64,000 nt of DNA, taken from NCBI RefSeq assembly GCF_000143415.4, contig NW_003314306.1, positions 1,245,129-1,309,128 on the forward strand. Reading direction: 5' to 3'. The position numbers and the translations under genes are program-made. Source of the stretch: Selaginella moellendorffii (lineage: Eukaryota > Plantae > Lycopodiophyta). The first letter of the stretch is position 1, and every line of letters begins with the position of its first letter. A model generated the notes under the pieces. That model was given only the letters and a program-made list of their open reading frames with translations. It had not been told where the DNA came from and did not search any database. Below are positions 4,790 to 11,699 of this stretch, piece after piece.

Positions 4790-5760
4790 TTTCGTATAAT
4801 AAGGATAGTGAGTAGCTCGAGCATAGTTGACCAACCTATAGTCTAGCTCCCACTTGCGTGCTTATCTTTGTTTTGCATCCGACTTAGGTCTAAAGTTCCA
4901 CACCATGTTAACTAGTGCACTACCCATATCCTTTTGTTAAGCTACCAGTATGCTAAAATAGCGCCAAACTCTATTTGGCTCTGTTTTACATACTGCTCCT
5001 GGCATTAGGATGCTGTAAACAACCACAGAAAACGACTTAAGAGACGGTCTATGGGGTTCAAATATAGAGGGAAAGGGCCCATGAATAAGAGTGCACCCCT
5101 TTTTCCAATCGGTTAAGGGTCTTGGAATACTTGTCCTTAGGTTTGAATACTGTACATTTACTGAACTCAATCCTTTAATGAAATATTGCACCTTTAGTAG
5201 CTCATTATAGGTGACTTGAGATTAAGGCAAAGATCATAGAACTTGCGGGCATACGTATCCAAAGACAAAGCCCCTTGCCGGATCTCTAATAGCTGGTTCA
5301 CAAGATCAACCTCTTCAAACTTCTTAACAAATGAAGCATAGAAAACCTTTGTCAAATTAATCCAAGAAGTCAGCTTTGGATTAGCTTTGATGTAGTTCTT
5401 CCACCACGAATAAGCATGGCCCATAAGCTTCGTCACAAAAAAATCTATCTTCAACTTATCCTCACAAGGATTGTGAGACTAACAAATTTCCCACAATTCC
5501 AACCAAAAATCAACTTCTTGACTATCACAAACATTTAGTGATGATTTCCATTCCACAATACCATAATCCTTGGCATGCTTGACATACCAATAGTAATCAC
5601 GAACATGAAATCGATTTAACCCTTGAGGTCTATGTGAAGCAAAAAATCCTTAATGAGATTGACAGAATCCTTAACTTCCTTGATCAACTAGTACAACTAA
5701 CAATGCCTTGGCTCATCTGAAAATAACTCAAACTGTTAATCATTGTGGTGCCATGAAAAC
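4790..5760 (-). mobile_element. Retrotransposon gag remnant
   Basis: ORF 5194-5454 KLMGHAYSWW...SWINLTKVFYASF...LLEIRQGALSLDTYARKF is typical Retrotrans_gag. Confidence 0.8.
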
Positions 5761-5845
5761 AAATACCTCAAACAACTGTTGTAAGAAAGTCAAGCAGATT
5801 ATAAAAGGTAGTGTTTGTGTCCTGTCACGAAAGGTAACTATATTC

Positions 5846-6760
5846 AGTTGTGTTCTTTGCTGGAACATGGATTCTCACTTGGAACTGGTGGAAAGGAAAA
5901 GACTTTGTAGATGCGCCATATGTGGGTTCCATTTCAGCTGAATTTGGCCTCAAACCAACCAGCATTCAGTACGGAAAGCATCCAGAGATTCAAGGTGAGT
6001 TGATTCAGTCTTAGAGAAATTAGGCCTATCACTGGTGATTTGTGTAGAGATTATTCCGAAGCAGTCCAAAGGAAGGAAGGAAGGTGGGAGTGTTTGTTTG
6101 CAATGCAGGAAAGTGTGGGAGTACTTTGTCAAGCTCACAAACTCAAATACTTTCATCCTCTCAATTTTGAACTGTAATGTGTGATCTTGCTTGCAGGATT
6201 TTATATTGTCGATCAATATTTGGCTTGTAAAATGGAGTGCGACTTACACTGGAAAAATACCAGCAACTTATTCCATGAGCGAGATGAAACCCTTTGGAGA
6301 AAGCTTTGTAAGTGTTGTGGCCTTGTGGAAAGATGTAATAACGATGGATAACTCCCACAAGAAGCATACAACCAAAGAAAGACACCAAGATCATTGCAGC
6401 ACATAGTTTGTAGCCCCGAGTTCTCAAGATGCCTCTAACTTGCTTCTTGATCTTACTGATGGCTTGTATTGATGAAGGCTTGGGACACACTGATGCTATT
6501 GTTTCTTCCAACAAACTTGACAATACCTAGATTTTCATTGATGTAGACCCCATTGTTTAGCTTCTTGGTTCTCTCGTGAGTAACATAAGCTTGAATGTTA
6601 ATTTTGTAGTCTGGTGATCGAAGGTCCCCACATGCATAACATTGACTATTTGCATATGTAAGTGTATCAAATTGTTCTTCATATGCACACTTGGATTATA
6701 ATAGCACCCTTTCTATTTATCAAGGATCTTCTCCATAAGGTCCAAACAAACAAAGAAGAA
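5846..6760. pseudogene. Scrambled fragment of a ferric reduction oxidase (FRO) gene
   Basis: Three blocks homologous to the FRO copy at 23.2-24.2 kb: C-terminal block on + (5846-6250, ends FHPLNFEL*), middle block on - (6258-6607), and EGPH..IAPFL..KDLLHKVQ block on + (6622-6755). Confidence 0.85.
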
Positions 6761-7580
6761 ATATGAAAGACACAGAAGCAAAACAATGGTGGATGACTCT
6801 CACTTTGATATATCATAATGCATATACATGATCAATAGTCGTGACTATCCTACATCTAGATCAGTGATGTGGCACTCATGTCACATCGACTCTCATGTCA
6901 TGGAGATTAACATGATCTCATAATGACATGAATATGAGATCACTCTCCCTTTGCATCTAAGCACTCTCATGTCCATGACAGGAAATCTGTCTCCCTCTCA
7001 AACCCTTTAGTTCTGCCTCTCTGGAATCCATGACTCTCTGCCTCCTAAATCGTCCCATGGCTGCTAGATCTCCCTCTCAGGAAACATCTATTCAAAGCAT
7101 AGCAAGGATGGATTAGGGAATACCTCAGTCCTACCAGAACCCTAATGGCTCTCTCCCTCTCCTTTGCAGCATAGTGCCTTAGGAATACTTAGCACTTAGC
7201 CCTCTTTGACACCAACCACAAGAATATTTTAAGAATATTCCATGGCCTGTGGGATGGGTTGGGGGGTTGGCCAAGGGTTCACTCTCTTGTTCATTTCATT
7301 GGTATCGGAGCAGCACGTTCTTTTGGGGATGGCGGGTGAGCAAGATATTGATCCTGATGAAGAGTATGGTGTTAGTGATAATGGCCATAACAATGCGGAA
7401 TAGACTCTTGATAATGTCATTATGTGGCAAGGATACTAGGTTTTTGAGGTTCAGAGTGACATAAGCAGAGCTCAAGATTTACATAATGTCAGAACTGTAG
7501 TATTTCGAGTGCTAGTACTTTGAAATATGAATTTGCTAGTTCTTGATTATAACAAGGATTTTTAGATGCTGCATTGCATA

Positions 7581-8653
7581 CTAAAGCTGCTGGACGAAGG
7601 CTTGACTCCTCAGAGCTTTAAGGAAAGATCGGTTGAAATAAAGCAATGTTTCTTAAGAAAGTTACATAAATTACTGATTTACTGCTGAATTTCGGGGGAT
7701 CACGAGGGAACGATATGTCCGATAGGATATTGCATTTCCCACGCTCCAGTCTCATGTAACCTCCTTCTCCCCAGCTCCTACCCCACCAGTTTTTGAGAAT
7801 CCAATACTCGACCCCATGTTGTGTCCGTCCATAGCCGACTATGAGTACAGGAAGGCTGGCCTTCGAATCAGAGCAGGGGCCTGAATATATGCCCTGCACA
7901 CGCGCAAAGAGTTTGCTATCAAATGCCCACATCCAGGAGACGTAACTTACTCCAGCATATGAATCAAATTCAGAAGCACTACCATCAATTCGAGCAATCA
8001 CCGGCTGCTTTGACACGGCCTCTACCAAGAAACTATCACTCGTTCCCGGCACAGTTCCGATTTGAGACATGGAAACATCATTAGTCTGTAAGGATAAGTT
8101 CAAAACGGTCAGTGCGACTTAAAACAACACATGACATACGAATGGCTTGCAGGAACTTTTAACGCCCGTATACGGGTACTTCGAGTCAGTAGTAATCCCA
8201 TGCAGGCGAATGTAGTTGAGCGCATGGTAAGGATCTGCAGTACCCTTCTCATTGCATCCGCTGTTGTATGTGTTGCAATCGATCAGTTGCTGTGGTGAGA
8301 GCACCACCATCCTTCCGGTTTGTATCGCTTTGAAACTCTCCACTGCACCTGCTGCTGCAAATGCCCATGACCCACCTGCAAAACTTGTGAGTAAGATATT
8401 GTCTTATCAAGTGAGTGACAAACAAAACCTTTGCAGCTTTTGCGAAGATCCACATCCCAGACTCTAGAAACAGCTCCAGATTCCCTCCAGTCGACTGAAT
8501 TGCTGAAGCTCGCCTCTTGAGACAATGCCTGTAAATTGAACTTGGGGCCCAAGTTTGCATGTTAGCGGGTGCACTGATCAGTACCTGGATCCAGATCAAC
8601 GACATTGTGAAGAAAAGAAGAAAGGAGAGTTGCAGTGGAGAAAAATATGCCAT
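7581..8653 (-). CDS. Secreted papain-family (C1A) protease-like protein, prodomain-less and predicted catalytically inactive
   Basis: Spliced model: exon 8653-8585 (signal peptide MAYFSPLQLSFLLFFTMSLIWIQ), 8528-8429, 8375-8140, 8085 onward, with GT-AG introns. Motifs VDWR, SWAF, LSPQQLIDC, YPY, QPV, VGYG, YWILKNWWGRSWGEGGYMRL. The last small exon is tentative (unspliced stop at 7618). Confidence 0.85.
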
Positions 8654-8736: not shown

Positions 8737-10010
8737 GGCATGCTTCTCTCACTCTTACCTTTTATACTTCATACTTCACGTGGTTTACAATTAGGCTGTC
8801 TTCTAAACACATGTTTGCAGTGGAGAAAAAGACACTTCTACTTAAAAATGATATAAGAGATTATCTTACATTTGCGCGTTTCTAGGTTAGCATTAAACAA
8901 GCTATGTATGTTAATAGACATCCACTGCGTTTCTCATACTCTTACGTGTAGATGTAGGCTGCTGTCTGAGCTGGGATTGACACACACCAAGATTTTGAAA
9001 ATGAAGTGGTGTACATGCTTACAATAAAATGCATATGGAAATGGGCTCTTATTCATACTTATTAACTTCGATTTACTTGCCTCGATCTGGTTTCAGGCTT
9101 CTTGGTGGCCGATTCATCTCCAAGGACTACAAGAAATTGAAAAGTTTGTATGTAGTTTTCTTTGGACTACCGATCAGATTAGAGTTAAATGTAGAAACAT
9201 CAGGTGTAGAGCACGTGGTTTACAATTAGAATTCATATATCAAAAACAAATCCTTACAAGATTCTATCTATTCACTTTTTTTTTTCATCTAACATTAGAT
9301 GTTTTACTATTTAAATGGTTGGCATTTGAATATAAGATAACTTTCTTTCACATTGCAATATAAATCCGGCATGCTTCTCTCACTCTTACCTTTTATACTT
9401 CATACTTCACGTGGTTTACAATTAGGCTGTCTTCTAAACACATGTTTGCAGTGGAGAAAAAGACACTTCTACTTAAAAATGATATAAGAGATTATCTTAC
9501 ATTTGCGCGTTTCTCACGACGACTCTAGGTTAGCATTAAACAAGCTATGTATGTTAATAGACATCCACTGCGTTTCTCATACTCTTACGTGTAGATGTAG
9601 GCTGCTGTCTGAGCTGGGATTGACACACACCAAGATTTTGAAAATGAAGTGGTGTACATGCTTACAATAAAATGCATATGGAAATGGGCTCTTATTCATA
9701 CTTATTAACTTCGATTTACTTGCCTCGATCTGGTTTCAGGCTTCTTGGTGGCCGATTCATCTCCAAGGACTACAAGAAATTGAAAAGTTTGTATGTAGTT
9801 TTCTTTGGACTACCGATCAGATTAGAGTTAAATGTAGAAACATCAGGTGTAGAGCACGTGGTTTACAATTAGAATTCATATATCAAAAACAAATCCTTAC
9901 AAGATTCTATCTATTCACTTTTTTTTTTCATCTAACATTAGATGTTTTACTATTTAAATGGTTGGCATTTGAATATAAGATAACTTTCTTTCACATTGCA
10001 ATATAAATCC
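8737..10010. repeat. Near-perfect tandem duplication (631 bp + 643 bp) of the intergenic/bidirectional promoter
   Basis: Unit 1 is 8737-9367 and unit 2 is 9368-10010. They appear identical apart from a 12-nt insertion (CACGACGACTCT) in unit 2. Each has two CACGTGGTTTACAATTAG motifs and ends in TATAAATCC. Confidence 0.95.
10002..10008 (+). promoter_or_regulatory. Putative TATA box of the jacalin-extensin gene
   Basis: TATAAAT about 50 nt upstream of ATG 10059. Confidence 0.55.
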
Positions 10011-10058: not shown

Positions 10059-11516
10059 ATGGCTAAATGGCTACTACTTTTCTTTGTCTTGGTATTGTTC
10101 TTCCGATGCATTTTGGGCAATGATTGAATTGTTTCATTGTGATGAAGGTTTTTGGTGCAAACGGAAAAAGATCCTCATTGTATGGTGGAACCGATGGGGA
10201 AAATTTCAGTGACGGTCAGTCTCAGGGTATTGTGAGAGTCAAGATCTGGTCTGGGTATATTGTGGATGGGATACAGGTTCAATCAGATCAAGGGGGAGAA
10301 CATGTTTGGTCTGATCCTCATGGCACTTCAAAGGGGGAAACCAAAGAGGTAGATATTTGTAATGCTCATCTTCTACTAAGATTTCTTTCAGGTGGTTTTA
10401 GCTTATCCGGATGAATACATCTACAAGATTTCAGGGCGCACTGGACCAAATCCATGGACTTCTAATGGCTTGAGTAGGCTTTACTTGCACGTCAACAATA
10501 GAAGGACCAATGCCCAAACTACCTTTGGCCCATTTGGTACCTACGACTACTCCAATCAGACTACATTTGATTCCCCAGAAGGGACAGTGGTTGGATTTTT
10601 TGGTTATGCCTCTTCAACAACATACTTCCGAGGAATTGGCGTCTATTTCCAAGATCCTTGTGACTGTCCAACACCATCACCACCGCCTTCTCCACCTCCA
10701 CCACCGCCATCACCACCGCCTTCTCCACCTCCACCACCGCCATCACCACCGCCTTCTCCACCTCCACCACCGCCCCCAAGACCCTGCAAAGGCTATCAAT
10801 GGTGCCCAGCTGGTAGTAGTTGTTGTTGTGTGGACCGTGCATGTAATAAGCACACATGCTGCATATCATCAACTCAAGGGTGCAATCCCTTGGGCTATTG
10901 TGAAGCTCTTCCACCCCCATCACCATTACCATTCCTCCAGCCATATCGCCACCACCACCACTGCCATCGCCACCACCTCCAATCTCCTCCGCCACCACCA
11001 CCAACACCATACCCACCACCTCCATCTCCTCCGCCACCACCACCACCACCATCCCCACCACCTCCATCTCCTCTGCCACCACCACCACCACCATCCCCAC
11101 CACCTCCATCTCCTCCGCCACCACCACCACCACCATCCCCACCACCTCCATCTCCTCCGCCACCACCACCACCACCATCCCCACCACCTCCATCTCCTCC
11201 GCCACCACCACCACCACCATCCCCACCACCTCCATCTCCTCCACCACCATCACCACCACCACCTCCATCTCCTCCGCCACCATCAACACCATCACCGCCA
11301 CCACCAGCCCCACCACCTCCGTCTCCAGCACCACCTTCACCACGGCCACAACCGCCATTGGGAAGATGTAAACGCTTTGATAGGTATTGCCAAAGTAGGT
11401 ATGGGCGGAAGTTTTGTTGCTGCGTGCCAAATAGCGCTGGAAACTGTGGATCCACCCGGACCTGCTGCTGTGATTCTTGTAACCCACGGAAGAATTGTGT
11501 CCAGTGTTGGGCTTAG
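10059..11516 (+). CDS. Secreted jacalin-like lectin / Ser-Pro(n) extensin / two Cys-rich modules chimeric protein
   Basis: Exons 10059-10091, ~10148-10348 and 10392-11516 with GT-AG introns. Signal peptide MAKWLLLFFVLVFGANG. Jacalin motifs YGG, SGYIVDGIQV, HG, PDEYIYKISGR, FGPFG, VVGFFG. SPPPP repeats and two CCC-containing modules. Confidence 0.88.
11010..11250 (+). repeat. 39-nt coding tandem repeat (PPPPSPPPPPPPS-type, ~6 copies)
   Basis: Repeated CCACCACCTCCATCTCCTCCGCCACCACCACCACCATCC-like unit. Confidence 0.85.
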
Positions 11517-11699
11517 AGGATGTAATCAGAAAATATTATGAACTTAATATGAATTTATTATAAAATAAATATAAATAATAATTCCAAAAATAGACTGAAA
11601 GAAGAAAAAAATATAATATTTTTTGGACAACTTTAGTAATGGCAAAAACTAGCTAAAAATAAATGATTTTGTTTTCTTAAAAAGACTAGATGTTCTAAG

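What the first reader, a model, noticed from the sequence alone, without database searches (positions are those of the whole stretch)
7581..8653. Papain-fold pseudo-enzyme: catalytic Cys->Ser, His->Leu, no oxyanion Gln, no I29 prodomain, structural cysteines kept
Seen: after splicing, the nucleophile motif reads DLRKSCKGGSWAF (canonical QGxCGSCWAF; Ser codon TCA at 8370-8368). The His motif reads SKASLPVLIVGYG (canonical NHAVxxVGYG; Leu codon CTT at 7854-7852). The catalytic Asn is kept (KNWWG). The signal-peptide exon splices straight onto ALSQEASFSNSVDWR, so the inhibitory prodomain is absent. The six cysteines of the three papain disulfides (SCK, IDC, SGC, SCK, GPC, GKC) are present and no stop or frameshift was found. 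Inference: concerted loss of catalysis and of the now-unneeded prodomain while the fold is preserved indicates neofunctionalisation rather than decay.
Basis: partly seen in the sequence, partly recalled or inferred. Interest (0 to 1): 0.75.

Follow-up and report, generated by a model that had tools for sequence, protein, structure and literature searches.

The report
Dead papain-like protein gene, spikemoss
This spikemoss (Selaginella moellendorffii) gene encodes a probably secreted protein that keeps the papain protease fold but lacks the cutting residues and the usual inhibitory prodomain; it belongs to a small spikemoss family of such "dead proteases" that most likely bind something rather than cut it.

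Summary
A five-exon minus-strand gene (8653-7618, GT-AG introns of 53-57 nt) encodes a 271-aa protein. It is identical to RefSeq XP_024541519.1, which is named "ervatamin-B" after an active protease.

- **Domain:** it has one full-length Peptidase_C1 domain and no I29 prodomain.
- **Active site:** Ser replaces Cys25, Leu replaces His159 and Arg replaces Gln19. Asn175 and the six disulfide cysteines are kept.
- **Fold:** the AlphaFold model (pLDDT 87) matches papain-type structures at 1.4-2 A.
- **Family:** the gene has two near-identical sister copies. With four other S. moellendorffii gene clusters it forms a single clade of dead papains (support 98/95), next to RD21-like proteases. I found no member outside this species.
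- **Order of losses:** two of these clusters still carry I29. Catalysis was therefore lost first and the prodomain later, not together.
- **Selection:** an open frame at about 55% divergence argues for long-term selection. Recent dN/dS is weak (0.35-0.47 between the two gene loci, 1.7 between the two likely haplotype copies).
- **Frameshift:** the window copy has a 4-bp deletion that adds a 20-residue read-through tail.

The scan had already found this family on other DNA of this genome. This is a new member of a known kind.

The parts
8585..8653 (-). Exon 1: start codon (8653-8651) and a hydrophobic N-terminus (residues 1-23), a probable signal peptide
   Evidence: Mean Kyte-Doolittle 1.47 over residues 6-23. 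The model predicts a helix at 6-25. No signal-peptide predictor was available, so secretion is inferred.
8429..8528 (-). Exon 2: start of the mature papain domain (ALSQEASFSNSVDWR…KSCK). Holds Arg52 at the Gln19 column (8444-8442) and Cys55 (= Cys22)
   Evidence: Homologues align here only from their mature-domain start.
8140..8375 (-). Exon 3: GSWAF…SSCKPF. Ser59 (TCA 8370-8368) stands at the nucleophile Cys25 site and is contiguous with the WAF motif in the same exon. Holds Cys90, Cys97 and Cys132, and a 3-residue insertion in the GCNGG loop (GCNEKGTAD)
   Evidence: PF00112 E 3e-17; alignment to ervatamin B Cys25; alignment A2.
7951..8085 (-). Exon 4: middle of the papain domain (TNDVS…DSYAG)
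   Evidence: Part of the PF00112 match on P0008.
7618..7893 (-). Exon 5: GIYSGPC…, with Leu194 (CTT 7854-7852) at the His159 site, Pro195 at Ala160, Asn215 (7791-7789) = Asn175, Trp216 at Ser176, Cys187 and Cys234. Stop TAA at 7620-7618
   Evidence: PF00112 E 3.3e-16; alignments to fibroinase, actinidin and ficin.
7621..7682 (-). Site of a 4-bp deletion relative to both sister copies (between 7682 and 7681), followed by the 20-residue read-through tail (K252-P271) that replaces their …FSSI-stop
   Evidence: Three-way DNA alignment. The tail has pLDDT about 58.
8529..8584 (-). Intron 1 (56 nt). In the sister loci RefSeq annotates a second acceptor 12 nt upstream, which adds FNLQ (isoform X1); the same sequence is present here

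Best explanation
The gene encodes a non-catalytic homologue of papain-family (C1A) cysteine proteases. The protein has a signal-peptide-like N-terminus followed directly by a complete papain domain, with no I29 prodomain. Three of the four catalytic-site residues are replaced (Cys25 to Ser, His159 to Leu, Gln19 to Arg), and there is no nearby substitute His, so the canonical thiol-imidazolium mechanism cannot operate. The three disulfides, the hydrophobic core and Asn175, Trp177 and Trp181 are kept, so it should fold like papain. It belongs to a Selaginella moellendorffii clade of dead papains that arose once from an RD21-like (granulin-type) protease. In that clade catalysis was lost first, and the prodomain was lost later in several lineages. 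The most likely mode of action (inferred, not shown) is that it is secreted and acts by binding a peptide, protein or small ligand in a remodelled cleft. The remodelling includes a one-residue insertion before the former nucleophile, a 3-residue insertion in the Gly65-Gly66 loop, and Pro/Ser at residue 160. The window copy is probably one haplotype of a locus that also has one recent paralogue.
For: - **Gene model:** it is identical to RefSeq XP_024541519.1.
- **Domain:** full-length PF00112 only, E 1.2e-49.
- **Catalytic columns:** the replaced residues align with Cys25 and the catalytic His.
- **Splicing cannot restore them:** the Ser and Leu codons are contiguous with the WAF and VLIVGYG motifs inside single exons.
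- **Fold:** AlphaFold2 mean pLDDT 87.3, pTM 0.80. Foldseek gives target-normalised TM-scores of 0.86-0.94 against mature papain-type chains (lower against proenzyme entries) and rmsd 1.4-2.8 A among the 50 best matches.
- **Retention:** 75 of 147 columns conserved at 90% or more in 98 active RD21-like proteases are retained. Within the mature domain the retained share is about two thirds and includes all six Cys columns.
- **No prodomain exon:** none in the 64 kb.
- **Relatives:** an exhaustive HMMER search of 1.84 billion representatives finds nothing above 50% identity except its own cluster. The nearest relatives are four other S. moellendorffii clusters that also lack Cys25 and His159.
- **Clade:** these form one clade, 98/95 support, beside the RD21-like group. 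They share the Cys22-x3-nonCys-Trp spacing, which is otherwise seen only in one protein of unknown origin.
- **Order of losses:** two of the dead clusters keep I29.
- **Open frame:** neutral walks from this coding sequence stay stop-free in 1% of trials at 30% amino-acid divergence and in 0 of 3000 at 50%.
- **Recent selection:** dN/dS against the paralogue is 0.35 (p 0.03) and 0.47 (p 0.06).
- **Sister copies:** all three copies keep open frames, and the aligned intron ends are unchanged.
Against:
- **No transcript contig:** no transcript-derived contig encoding exactly these proteins is on record, only the genome scaffolds.
- **Weak recent constraint:** between the window copy and its likely allele there are 6 nonsynonymous changes against 1 synonymous (dN/dS 1.74, not significant). 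Pooled over the three copies, the ratio is about 0.5 and not significantly below 1.
- **Introns as conserved as exons:** this holds between the paralogues, so the similarity may reflect youth or gene conversion rather than selection.
- **Terminal frameshift:** the window copy carries one.
- **No ligand or partner is known.**
- **Possible tree artefact:** the clade sits on long branches, so part of its support could be long-branch attraction.
- **Secretion is inferred** from hydrophobicity only.
Confidence: 0.62

Rival explanations
1. A recently relaxed or decaying copy. The family may once have had a non-catalytic function, but this young duplicated locus (window copy, allele and paralogue) now evolves nearly neutrally and may be silent.
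For: dN/dS is 1.74 between the window copy and L001, and about 0.5 pooled, not significant. There is a 4-bp deletion with a read-through tail in the window copy. Introns are no more diverged than exons. The surroundings are rearranged: a 1.8-kb inversion starts about 150 nt past the stop, and tandem duplications lie in the upstream spacer. No transcript contig is on record.
Against: All three copies keep a full open frame, and the aligned intron ends are unchanged. The comparisons with the paralogue give dN/dS 0.35-0.47. The frameshift lies after the end of the papain domain. RefSeq annotates two splice isoforms at each sister locus; from my knowledge of the NCBI pipeline, that normally requires transcript evidence.
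Confidence: 0.25
2. A specific decoy or inhibitor sponge. The secreted dead papain would bind pathogen or endogenous inhibitors of papain-like proteases (cystatin or effector type). It would either titrate them away from active proteases or report them to a receptor, as mature Rcr3 does without needing catalysis.
For: The protein is secreted-type and lacks a prodomain, so the cleft would be exposed from the start. Rcr3 needs no catalytic activity for Avr2 perception (PMC7382257). The three copies differ at sites near the former cleft (T/R/E at residue 92, P/S at 195).
Against: Cleft elements that inhibitors and substrates contact are themselves altered: Gln19 to Arg, an extra residue before position 25, an insertion in the Gly65-Gly66 loop, and Ser176 to Trp. 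No binding data exist. The variable sites are too few for any test.
Confidence: 0.12
3. A two-gene module with the divergently transcribed jacalin/Pro-rich gene 1.4 kb upstream, sharing a bidirectional promoter.
For: The jacalin-type neighbour lies head-to-head at all three copies.
Against: The three pairings descend from one copied block of about 4.5 kb, so they count as a single observation. None of four other dead-papain loci has a jacalin neighbour.
Confidence: 0.07
4. A residual hydrolase that uses Ser59 as nucleophile, like the Ser-variant papain homologues.
For: Ser at the nucleophile site occurs in silicatein, which is a good structural match. Asn175 is kept.
Against: The general base His159 is Leu and the oxyanion-hole Gln19 is Arg in all three copies. 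The three His residues I noted by reading the sequence (H107, H115, H206) lie outside the catalytic columns, and H115 is Gln or Arg in the two sister copies.
Confidence: 0.03

Closest known systems
Other dead papain-like genes of Selaginella moellendorffii: RefSeq 'zingipain-1' XP_024529739.1 and XP_024523772.1, 'cysteine proteinase 7' XP_002971529.2, 'zingipain-2' XP_024545824.1 and 'ervatamin-B' XP_002961060.1
   Same: They share one clade with this gene (98/95). None has Cys25 or His159, and all have the same extra residue between Cys22 and position 25. Most lack the prodomain.
   Different: They are only 43-45% identical to this protein in alignment A2. They carry other additions: a Pro-rich stalk with a small Cys-rich tail, a LamG domain, or a retained I29 with or without granulin. 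The window clade has its own 3-residue insertions and Trp at Ser176, and none of the other loci has a jacalin neighbour.
RD21/XBCP3-type granulin-containing papain-like cysteine proteases of plants
   Same: This is the nearest active group by profile score and in the tree. It shares the mature-domain fold and disulfides.
   Different: These proteases have the Cys-His-Asn triad, Gln19, an I29 prodomain and usually a granulin tail. The window protein has none of these except Asn.
Soybean P34 / Gly m Bd 30K
   Same: A plant papain-superfamily protein whose active-site mutation silences protease activity. It has been reported as a binding protein for syringolide elicitors (PMC4274471 and Ji et al. 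1998, cited there).
   Different: It is a seed protein of an angiosperm and an independent loss. Relatedness beyond the superfamily was not tested here.
Expressed C1A pseudopeptidases of wild Hordeum (PMC13520124)
   Same: These are plant C1A copies with Cys-to-Ser at the nucleophile position, predicted to be folded and found to be transcribed.
   Different: They derive from a horizontally transferred grass gene. Their prodomain status was not analysed in that paper, and they are an unrelated lineage.
Tomato Rcr3
   Same: A secreted papain-like protein whose immune-receptor role needs binding, not catalysis (PMC7382257).
   Different: Rcr3 has an intact triad and a prodomain that subtilases remove.
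Silicatein alpha (PDB 6zq3)
   Same: Papain fold with Ser at the nucleophile site. It is a structural match to the model.
   Different: It is a sponge protein that works in silica deposition.

Membership tests
Peptidase family C1A (papain), by homology and fold | Significant full-length match to the Peptidase_C1 profile | tested here: met
   PF00112 E 1.2e-49, residues 33-243, profile positions 3-219 of 220. Exon by exon: E 3e-17 and 3.3e-16.
Peptidase family C1A (papain), by homology and fold | Two-lobed papain fold | tested here: met
   AlphaFold2 pLDDT 87.3. Foldseek against mature papain-type chains gives target-normalised TM-scores of 0.86-0.94; rmsd 1.4-2.8 A among the 50 best matches. 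This is a prediction, not a solved structure.
Peptidase family C1A (papain), by homology and fold | Three conserved disulfides (22-63, 56-95, 153-200 in papain numbering) | tested here: met
   C55, C97, C90, C132, C187 and C234 occupy the conserved Cys columns. Bond formation itself was not tested.
Active C1A peptidase | Nucleophile Cys25 | tested here: not met
   Ser59 (TCA 8370-8368) aligns with Cys25.
Active C1A peptidase | General base His159 | tested here: not met
   Leu194 (CTT 7854-7852) aligns with the catalytic His.
Active C1A peptidase | Asn175 | tested here: met
   Asn215 (7791-7789).
Active C1A peptidase | Oxyanion-hole Gln19 | tested here: not met
   Arg52 stands at the invariant Gln column.
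Active C1A peptidase | I29 inhibitory prodomain (zymogen form) | tested here: not met
   No PF08246 match on the protein. tblastn finds no prodomain match in the window.
Active C1A peptidase | Proteolytic activity or labelling by activity probes | not testable with these tools
   This needs the bench.
Selaginella moellendorffii dead-papain clade | Groups with the other dead S. moellendorffii clusters, apart from active proteases | tested here: met
   One clade of 10 rows, ultrafast bootstrap 98 and SH-aLRT 95. Long branches are a caveat.
Selaginella moellendorffii dead-papain clade | Shared derived characters: no Cys25, no His159, no Gln19, one extra residue between Cys22 and position 25, and Ala at the Ser29 column | tested here: met
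Decoy or inhibitor-binding papain (Rcr3-like role) | Binds a protease inhibitor or effector, and is perceived by or protects a partner | not testable with these tools
   No data. The cleft residues are altered.
Expressed gene | Spliced transcripts from this locus | not tested
The only indirect evidence is the RefSeq model and the isoforms at the sister loci.

The most novel reading that the evidence does not exclude
The window gene and its paralogue are fast-evolving extracellular decoys: dead, prodomain-less papains that expose a remodelled cleft to capture pathogen protease inhibitors or other ligands. They would be co-expressed from a shared, copy-number-variable bidirectional promoter with a jacalin/Pro-rich wall lectin. 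This would be a lycophyte-specific two-part surveillance device that evolved independently of the seed-plant Rcr3 system.
Probability: 0.07. Interest if true: 0.7.

Novelty: new member of a known kind. Interest (0 to 1): 0.4.

Why it matters
Non-catalytic homologues of papain-like proteases are known in soybean (P34), wild barley, sponges and malaria parasites, so the kind itself is not new.

- **What this locus adds:** it is one more member of a spikemoss-only clade in which the dead state is old and the protective prodomain was later discarded in several lineages. That order of events shows the papain fold can be kept and secreted without its prodomain, which in active enzymes also helps folding.
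- **Annotation:** these genes are named after active proteases in RefSeq ("ervatamin-B", "zingipain", "cysteine proteinase 7"). This inflates the count of active proteases in this reference lycophyte.
- **Open question:** what the family binds is unknown.

Tried and rejected
- **Hidden prodomain exon:** tblastn of six I29-bearing homologues against all 64 kb gave nothing significant.
- **Splice variant restoring Cys or His:** rejected, because both substituted codons sit inside their motifs within single exons.
- **Transcript contigs:** exact-protein look-ups for five products found only the three genome scaffolds.
- **Literature by locus tag:** searches for SELMODRAFT_112799, SELMODRAFT_105755 and SELMODRAFT_92638 found no paper. 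Searches for Selaginella papain-like proteases found gene counts only, with no mention of dead members in the passages I retrieved.
- **dN/dS among the three copies:** underpowered, with 7-20 changes per pair.
- **Jacalin pairing as a conserved module:** not supported, since none of four other family loci has a jacalin neighbour.
- **Members outside S. moellendorffii:** none was seen in the profile word search or among the best 150 of the exhaustive search. Proteomes of other Selaginella species may simply be missing from those libraries.
- Exon-level searches went by window reference. One search used the natural unspliced ORF at 7621-8103. Whole-protein steps used the database's own protein, P0008.

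Full report
**What is there.** On the minus strand a five-exon gene runs from the ATG at 8653 to the TAA at 7620-7618. The exons are 8653-8585, 8528-8429, 8375-8140, 8085-7951 and 7893-7618. The introns are 56, 53, 54 and 57 nt, all GT..AG. Each exon translation lies in order and contiguous in a database protein of 271 aa, P0008. This is RefSeq XP_024541519.1, "ervatamin-B [Selaginella moellendorffii]", on scaffold GL377610.1.

Whole-protein steps used the database's own entry, P0008.

**Check of the observation.**
- Exons 3 and 5 each match Peptidase_C1 on their own (E 3e-17 and 3.3e-16). The whole protein matches over profile positions 3-219 of 220 (E 1.2e-49), with no I29 domain.
- In alignments to solved structures, Ser59 (TCA 8370-8368) pairs with Cys25 of ervatamin B. 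Leu194 (CTT 7854-7852) pairs with the catalytic His of actinidin and fibroinase.
- Against 98 active RD21-type proteases, Arg52 stands at the invariant Gln19 column and Asn215 is kept. Trp replaces Ser176 and Pro replaces Ala160. All six conserved cysteine columns are occupied.
- Both substituted codons lie inside their motifs within single exons, so no alternative splicing could restore them.
- tblastn with six prodomain-bearing homologues finds only the mature domain in the 64 kb.
- The upstream neighbour, 1.4 kb away, is a divergently oriented jacalin/Pro-rich gene.
- AlphaFold2 gives mean pLDDT 87.3 and pTM 0.80. Foldseek matches mature papain-type chains at target-normalised TM-scores of 0.86-0.94, with rmsd 1.4-2.8 A among the 50 best matches.

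Compared with its two sister copies, the window copy has a 4-bp deletion just before their stop codon (…FSSI*). The deletion lies between 7682 and 7681 and yields a 20-residue read-through tail of low model confidence.

**Relatives.**
- The 90%-identity cluster holds three loci of the same assembly: the window; L001 on GL377597.1; and L002 on GL377578.1.
- L001 is collinear with the window over 17 kb at 92-98% identity, apart from a 1.8-kb inversion. It is probably the other haplotype.
- L002 shares only about 4.5 kb with the window, so it is a paralogue. All three copies have Ser59 and Leu194.
- An exhaustive HMMER search of 1.84 billion representatives found nothing above 50% identity outside this cluster.
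- The closest hits are four more S. moellendorffii clusters, named after active proteases in RefSeq, and all lack Cys25 and His159.
  - "Zingipain-1" (273-332 aa) has no prodomain, and some members carry a Pro-rich stalk and a small Cys-rich tail.
  - "Cysteine proteinase 7" (477 aa) has no prodomain and carries a LamG domain.
  - "Zingipain-2" (374 aa) keeps I29.
  - A second "ervatamin-B" (418 aa) keeps I29 and has a granulin-like tail (so named in UniRef; Pfam found no granulin domain).
- All of these share an extra residue between Cys22 and position 25. Among the best 150 representatives, that spacing is otherwise seen in only one protein of unknown origin.
- A maximum-likelihood tree puts all ten dead rows in one clade (98/95), beside the RD21-like granulin group (87/78). 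The profile search also ranks RD21/XBCP3-type proteases next.

Because two dead clusters keep I29, catalysis was lost first and the prodomain later. It was probably lost more than once. The losses were not concerted.

**Selection.**
- Long term: the window clade is only 43-45% identical to its nearest dead relatives in alignment A2, yet the frame is open and the intron ends are intact.
- Neutral mutation walks from this coding sequence stay stop-free in 1% of trials at 30% amino-acid divergence, and in none of 3000 at 50%, with indels ignored.
- If the dead state is ancestral, as the tree and the shared insertion indicate, the lineage was constrained for most of its history after catalysis was lost.
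- Short term: the evidence is weak. Nei-Gojobori dN/dS is 0.35 (p 0.03) and 0.47 (p 0.06) against the paralogue. Against the likely allele it is 1.74 on seven changes.
- Introns are about as conserved as exons.
- Changes cluster in exon 3. Residue 92 is Thr, Arg or Glu in the three copies. That is suggestive, but too little to test.

**Expression.** Exact-protein look-ups found only the genome scaffolds. The only indirect hint is that RefSeq annotates two isoforms at each sister locus, which differ by a 12-nt alternative acceptor. From my knowledge of the NCBI pipeline, that normally requires transcript support.

**Mechanism.**
- Shown: a papain-fold protein without the Cys-His pair, without the oxyanion Gln and without a prodomain.
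- Inferred: it is secreted, folds without a prodomain and acts by binding rather than cleaving.
- Its cleft is remodelled: an extra residue before position 25, a 3-residue insertion in the Gly65-Gly66 loop, Trp at residue 176, and Pro or Ser at residue 160.
- A decoy or inhibitor-sponge role like that of mature Rcr3 is possible (PMC7382257). It is weakened by the altered cleft residues.
- The head-to-head jacalin neighbour is present at all three copies, but only because one block was copied. Four other family loci have no such neighbour, so a two-gene module has no independent support.

**Comparison with what is known.**
- Dead papain homologues are common. Fifty of the best 150 representatives lack Cys in at least one domain.
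- Plant examples include soybean P34 and the expressed Hordeum pseudopeptidases (PMC13520124).
- I found no paper describing the Selaginella clade.
- Earlier follow-ups of this scan had already reported dead, prodomain-less papains at other loci of this genome. I re-derived the family independently here.

**Verdict.** This is a real, correctly modelled gene for a papain-fold pseudo-protease. It is a new member of a known kind. Its interest is moderate, and its function and expression remain open.

Noticed in passing
window 8737-9823: A 100%-identical tandem duplication lies in the spacer between the dead-papain gene and the jacalin gene: 8737-8883 = 9368-9514, and 8881-9180 = 9524-9823, with spacing 631/643. 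The likely allelic copy, L001, has three units. A TATAAAA at 8766-8760, 107 nt upstream of the ATG, lies inside the repeated unit.
   Followed up: partly
window 5681-7464: A segment of about 1.8 kb, starting about 150 nt past the stop codon, is inverted relative to the collinear scaffold GL377597.1 (L001 9206-10998).
   Followed up: no
window about 10059-11541 (+): A divergently transcribed neighbour with a jacalin domain (Pfam on record) and long Pro-rich, extensin-like repeats (10668-11343, periods 33 and 42). Homologous neighbours lie beside both sister copies.
   Followed up: partly
window 7894-7950 (-): Intron 4 is in frame and free of stop codons, so exon 4, intron 4 and exon 5 read as one 161-aa ORF (7618-8103). 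Intron retention would insert 19 residues without breaking the frame.
   Followed up: no
L004 10001-10996 and 13936-15107: Two dead, prodomain-less papain genes (273 and 332 aa) lie in tandem on GL377565.1, separated by an unannotated 413-aa gene.
   Followed up: no
L005 10001-11606: The dead papain fused to a LamG/ConA-like domain (PF13385, E 2.2e-27) is confirmed as a family member.
   Followed up: partly
RefSeq names of P0008, P0101, P0096, P0106 and P0095: All five dead clusters carry names of active proteases (ervatamin-B, zingipain-1, zingipain-2, cysteine proteinase 7), which is misleading for counts of active proteases.
   Followed up: yes
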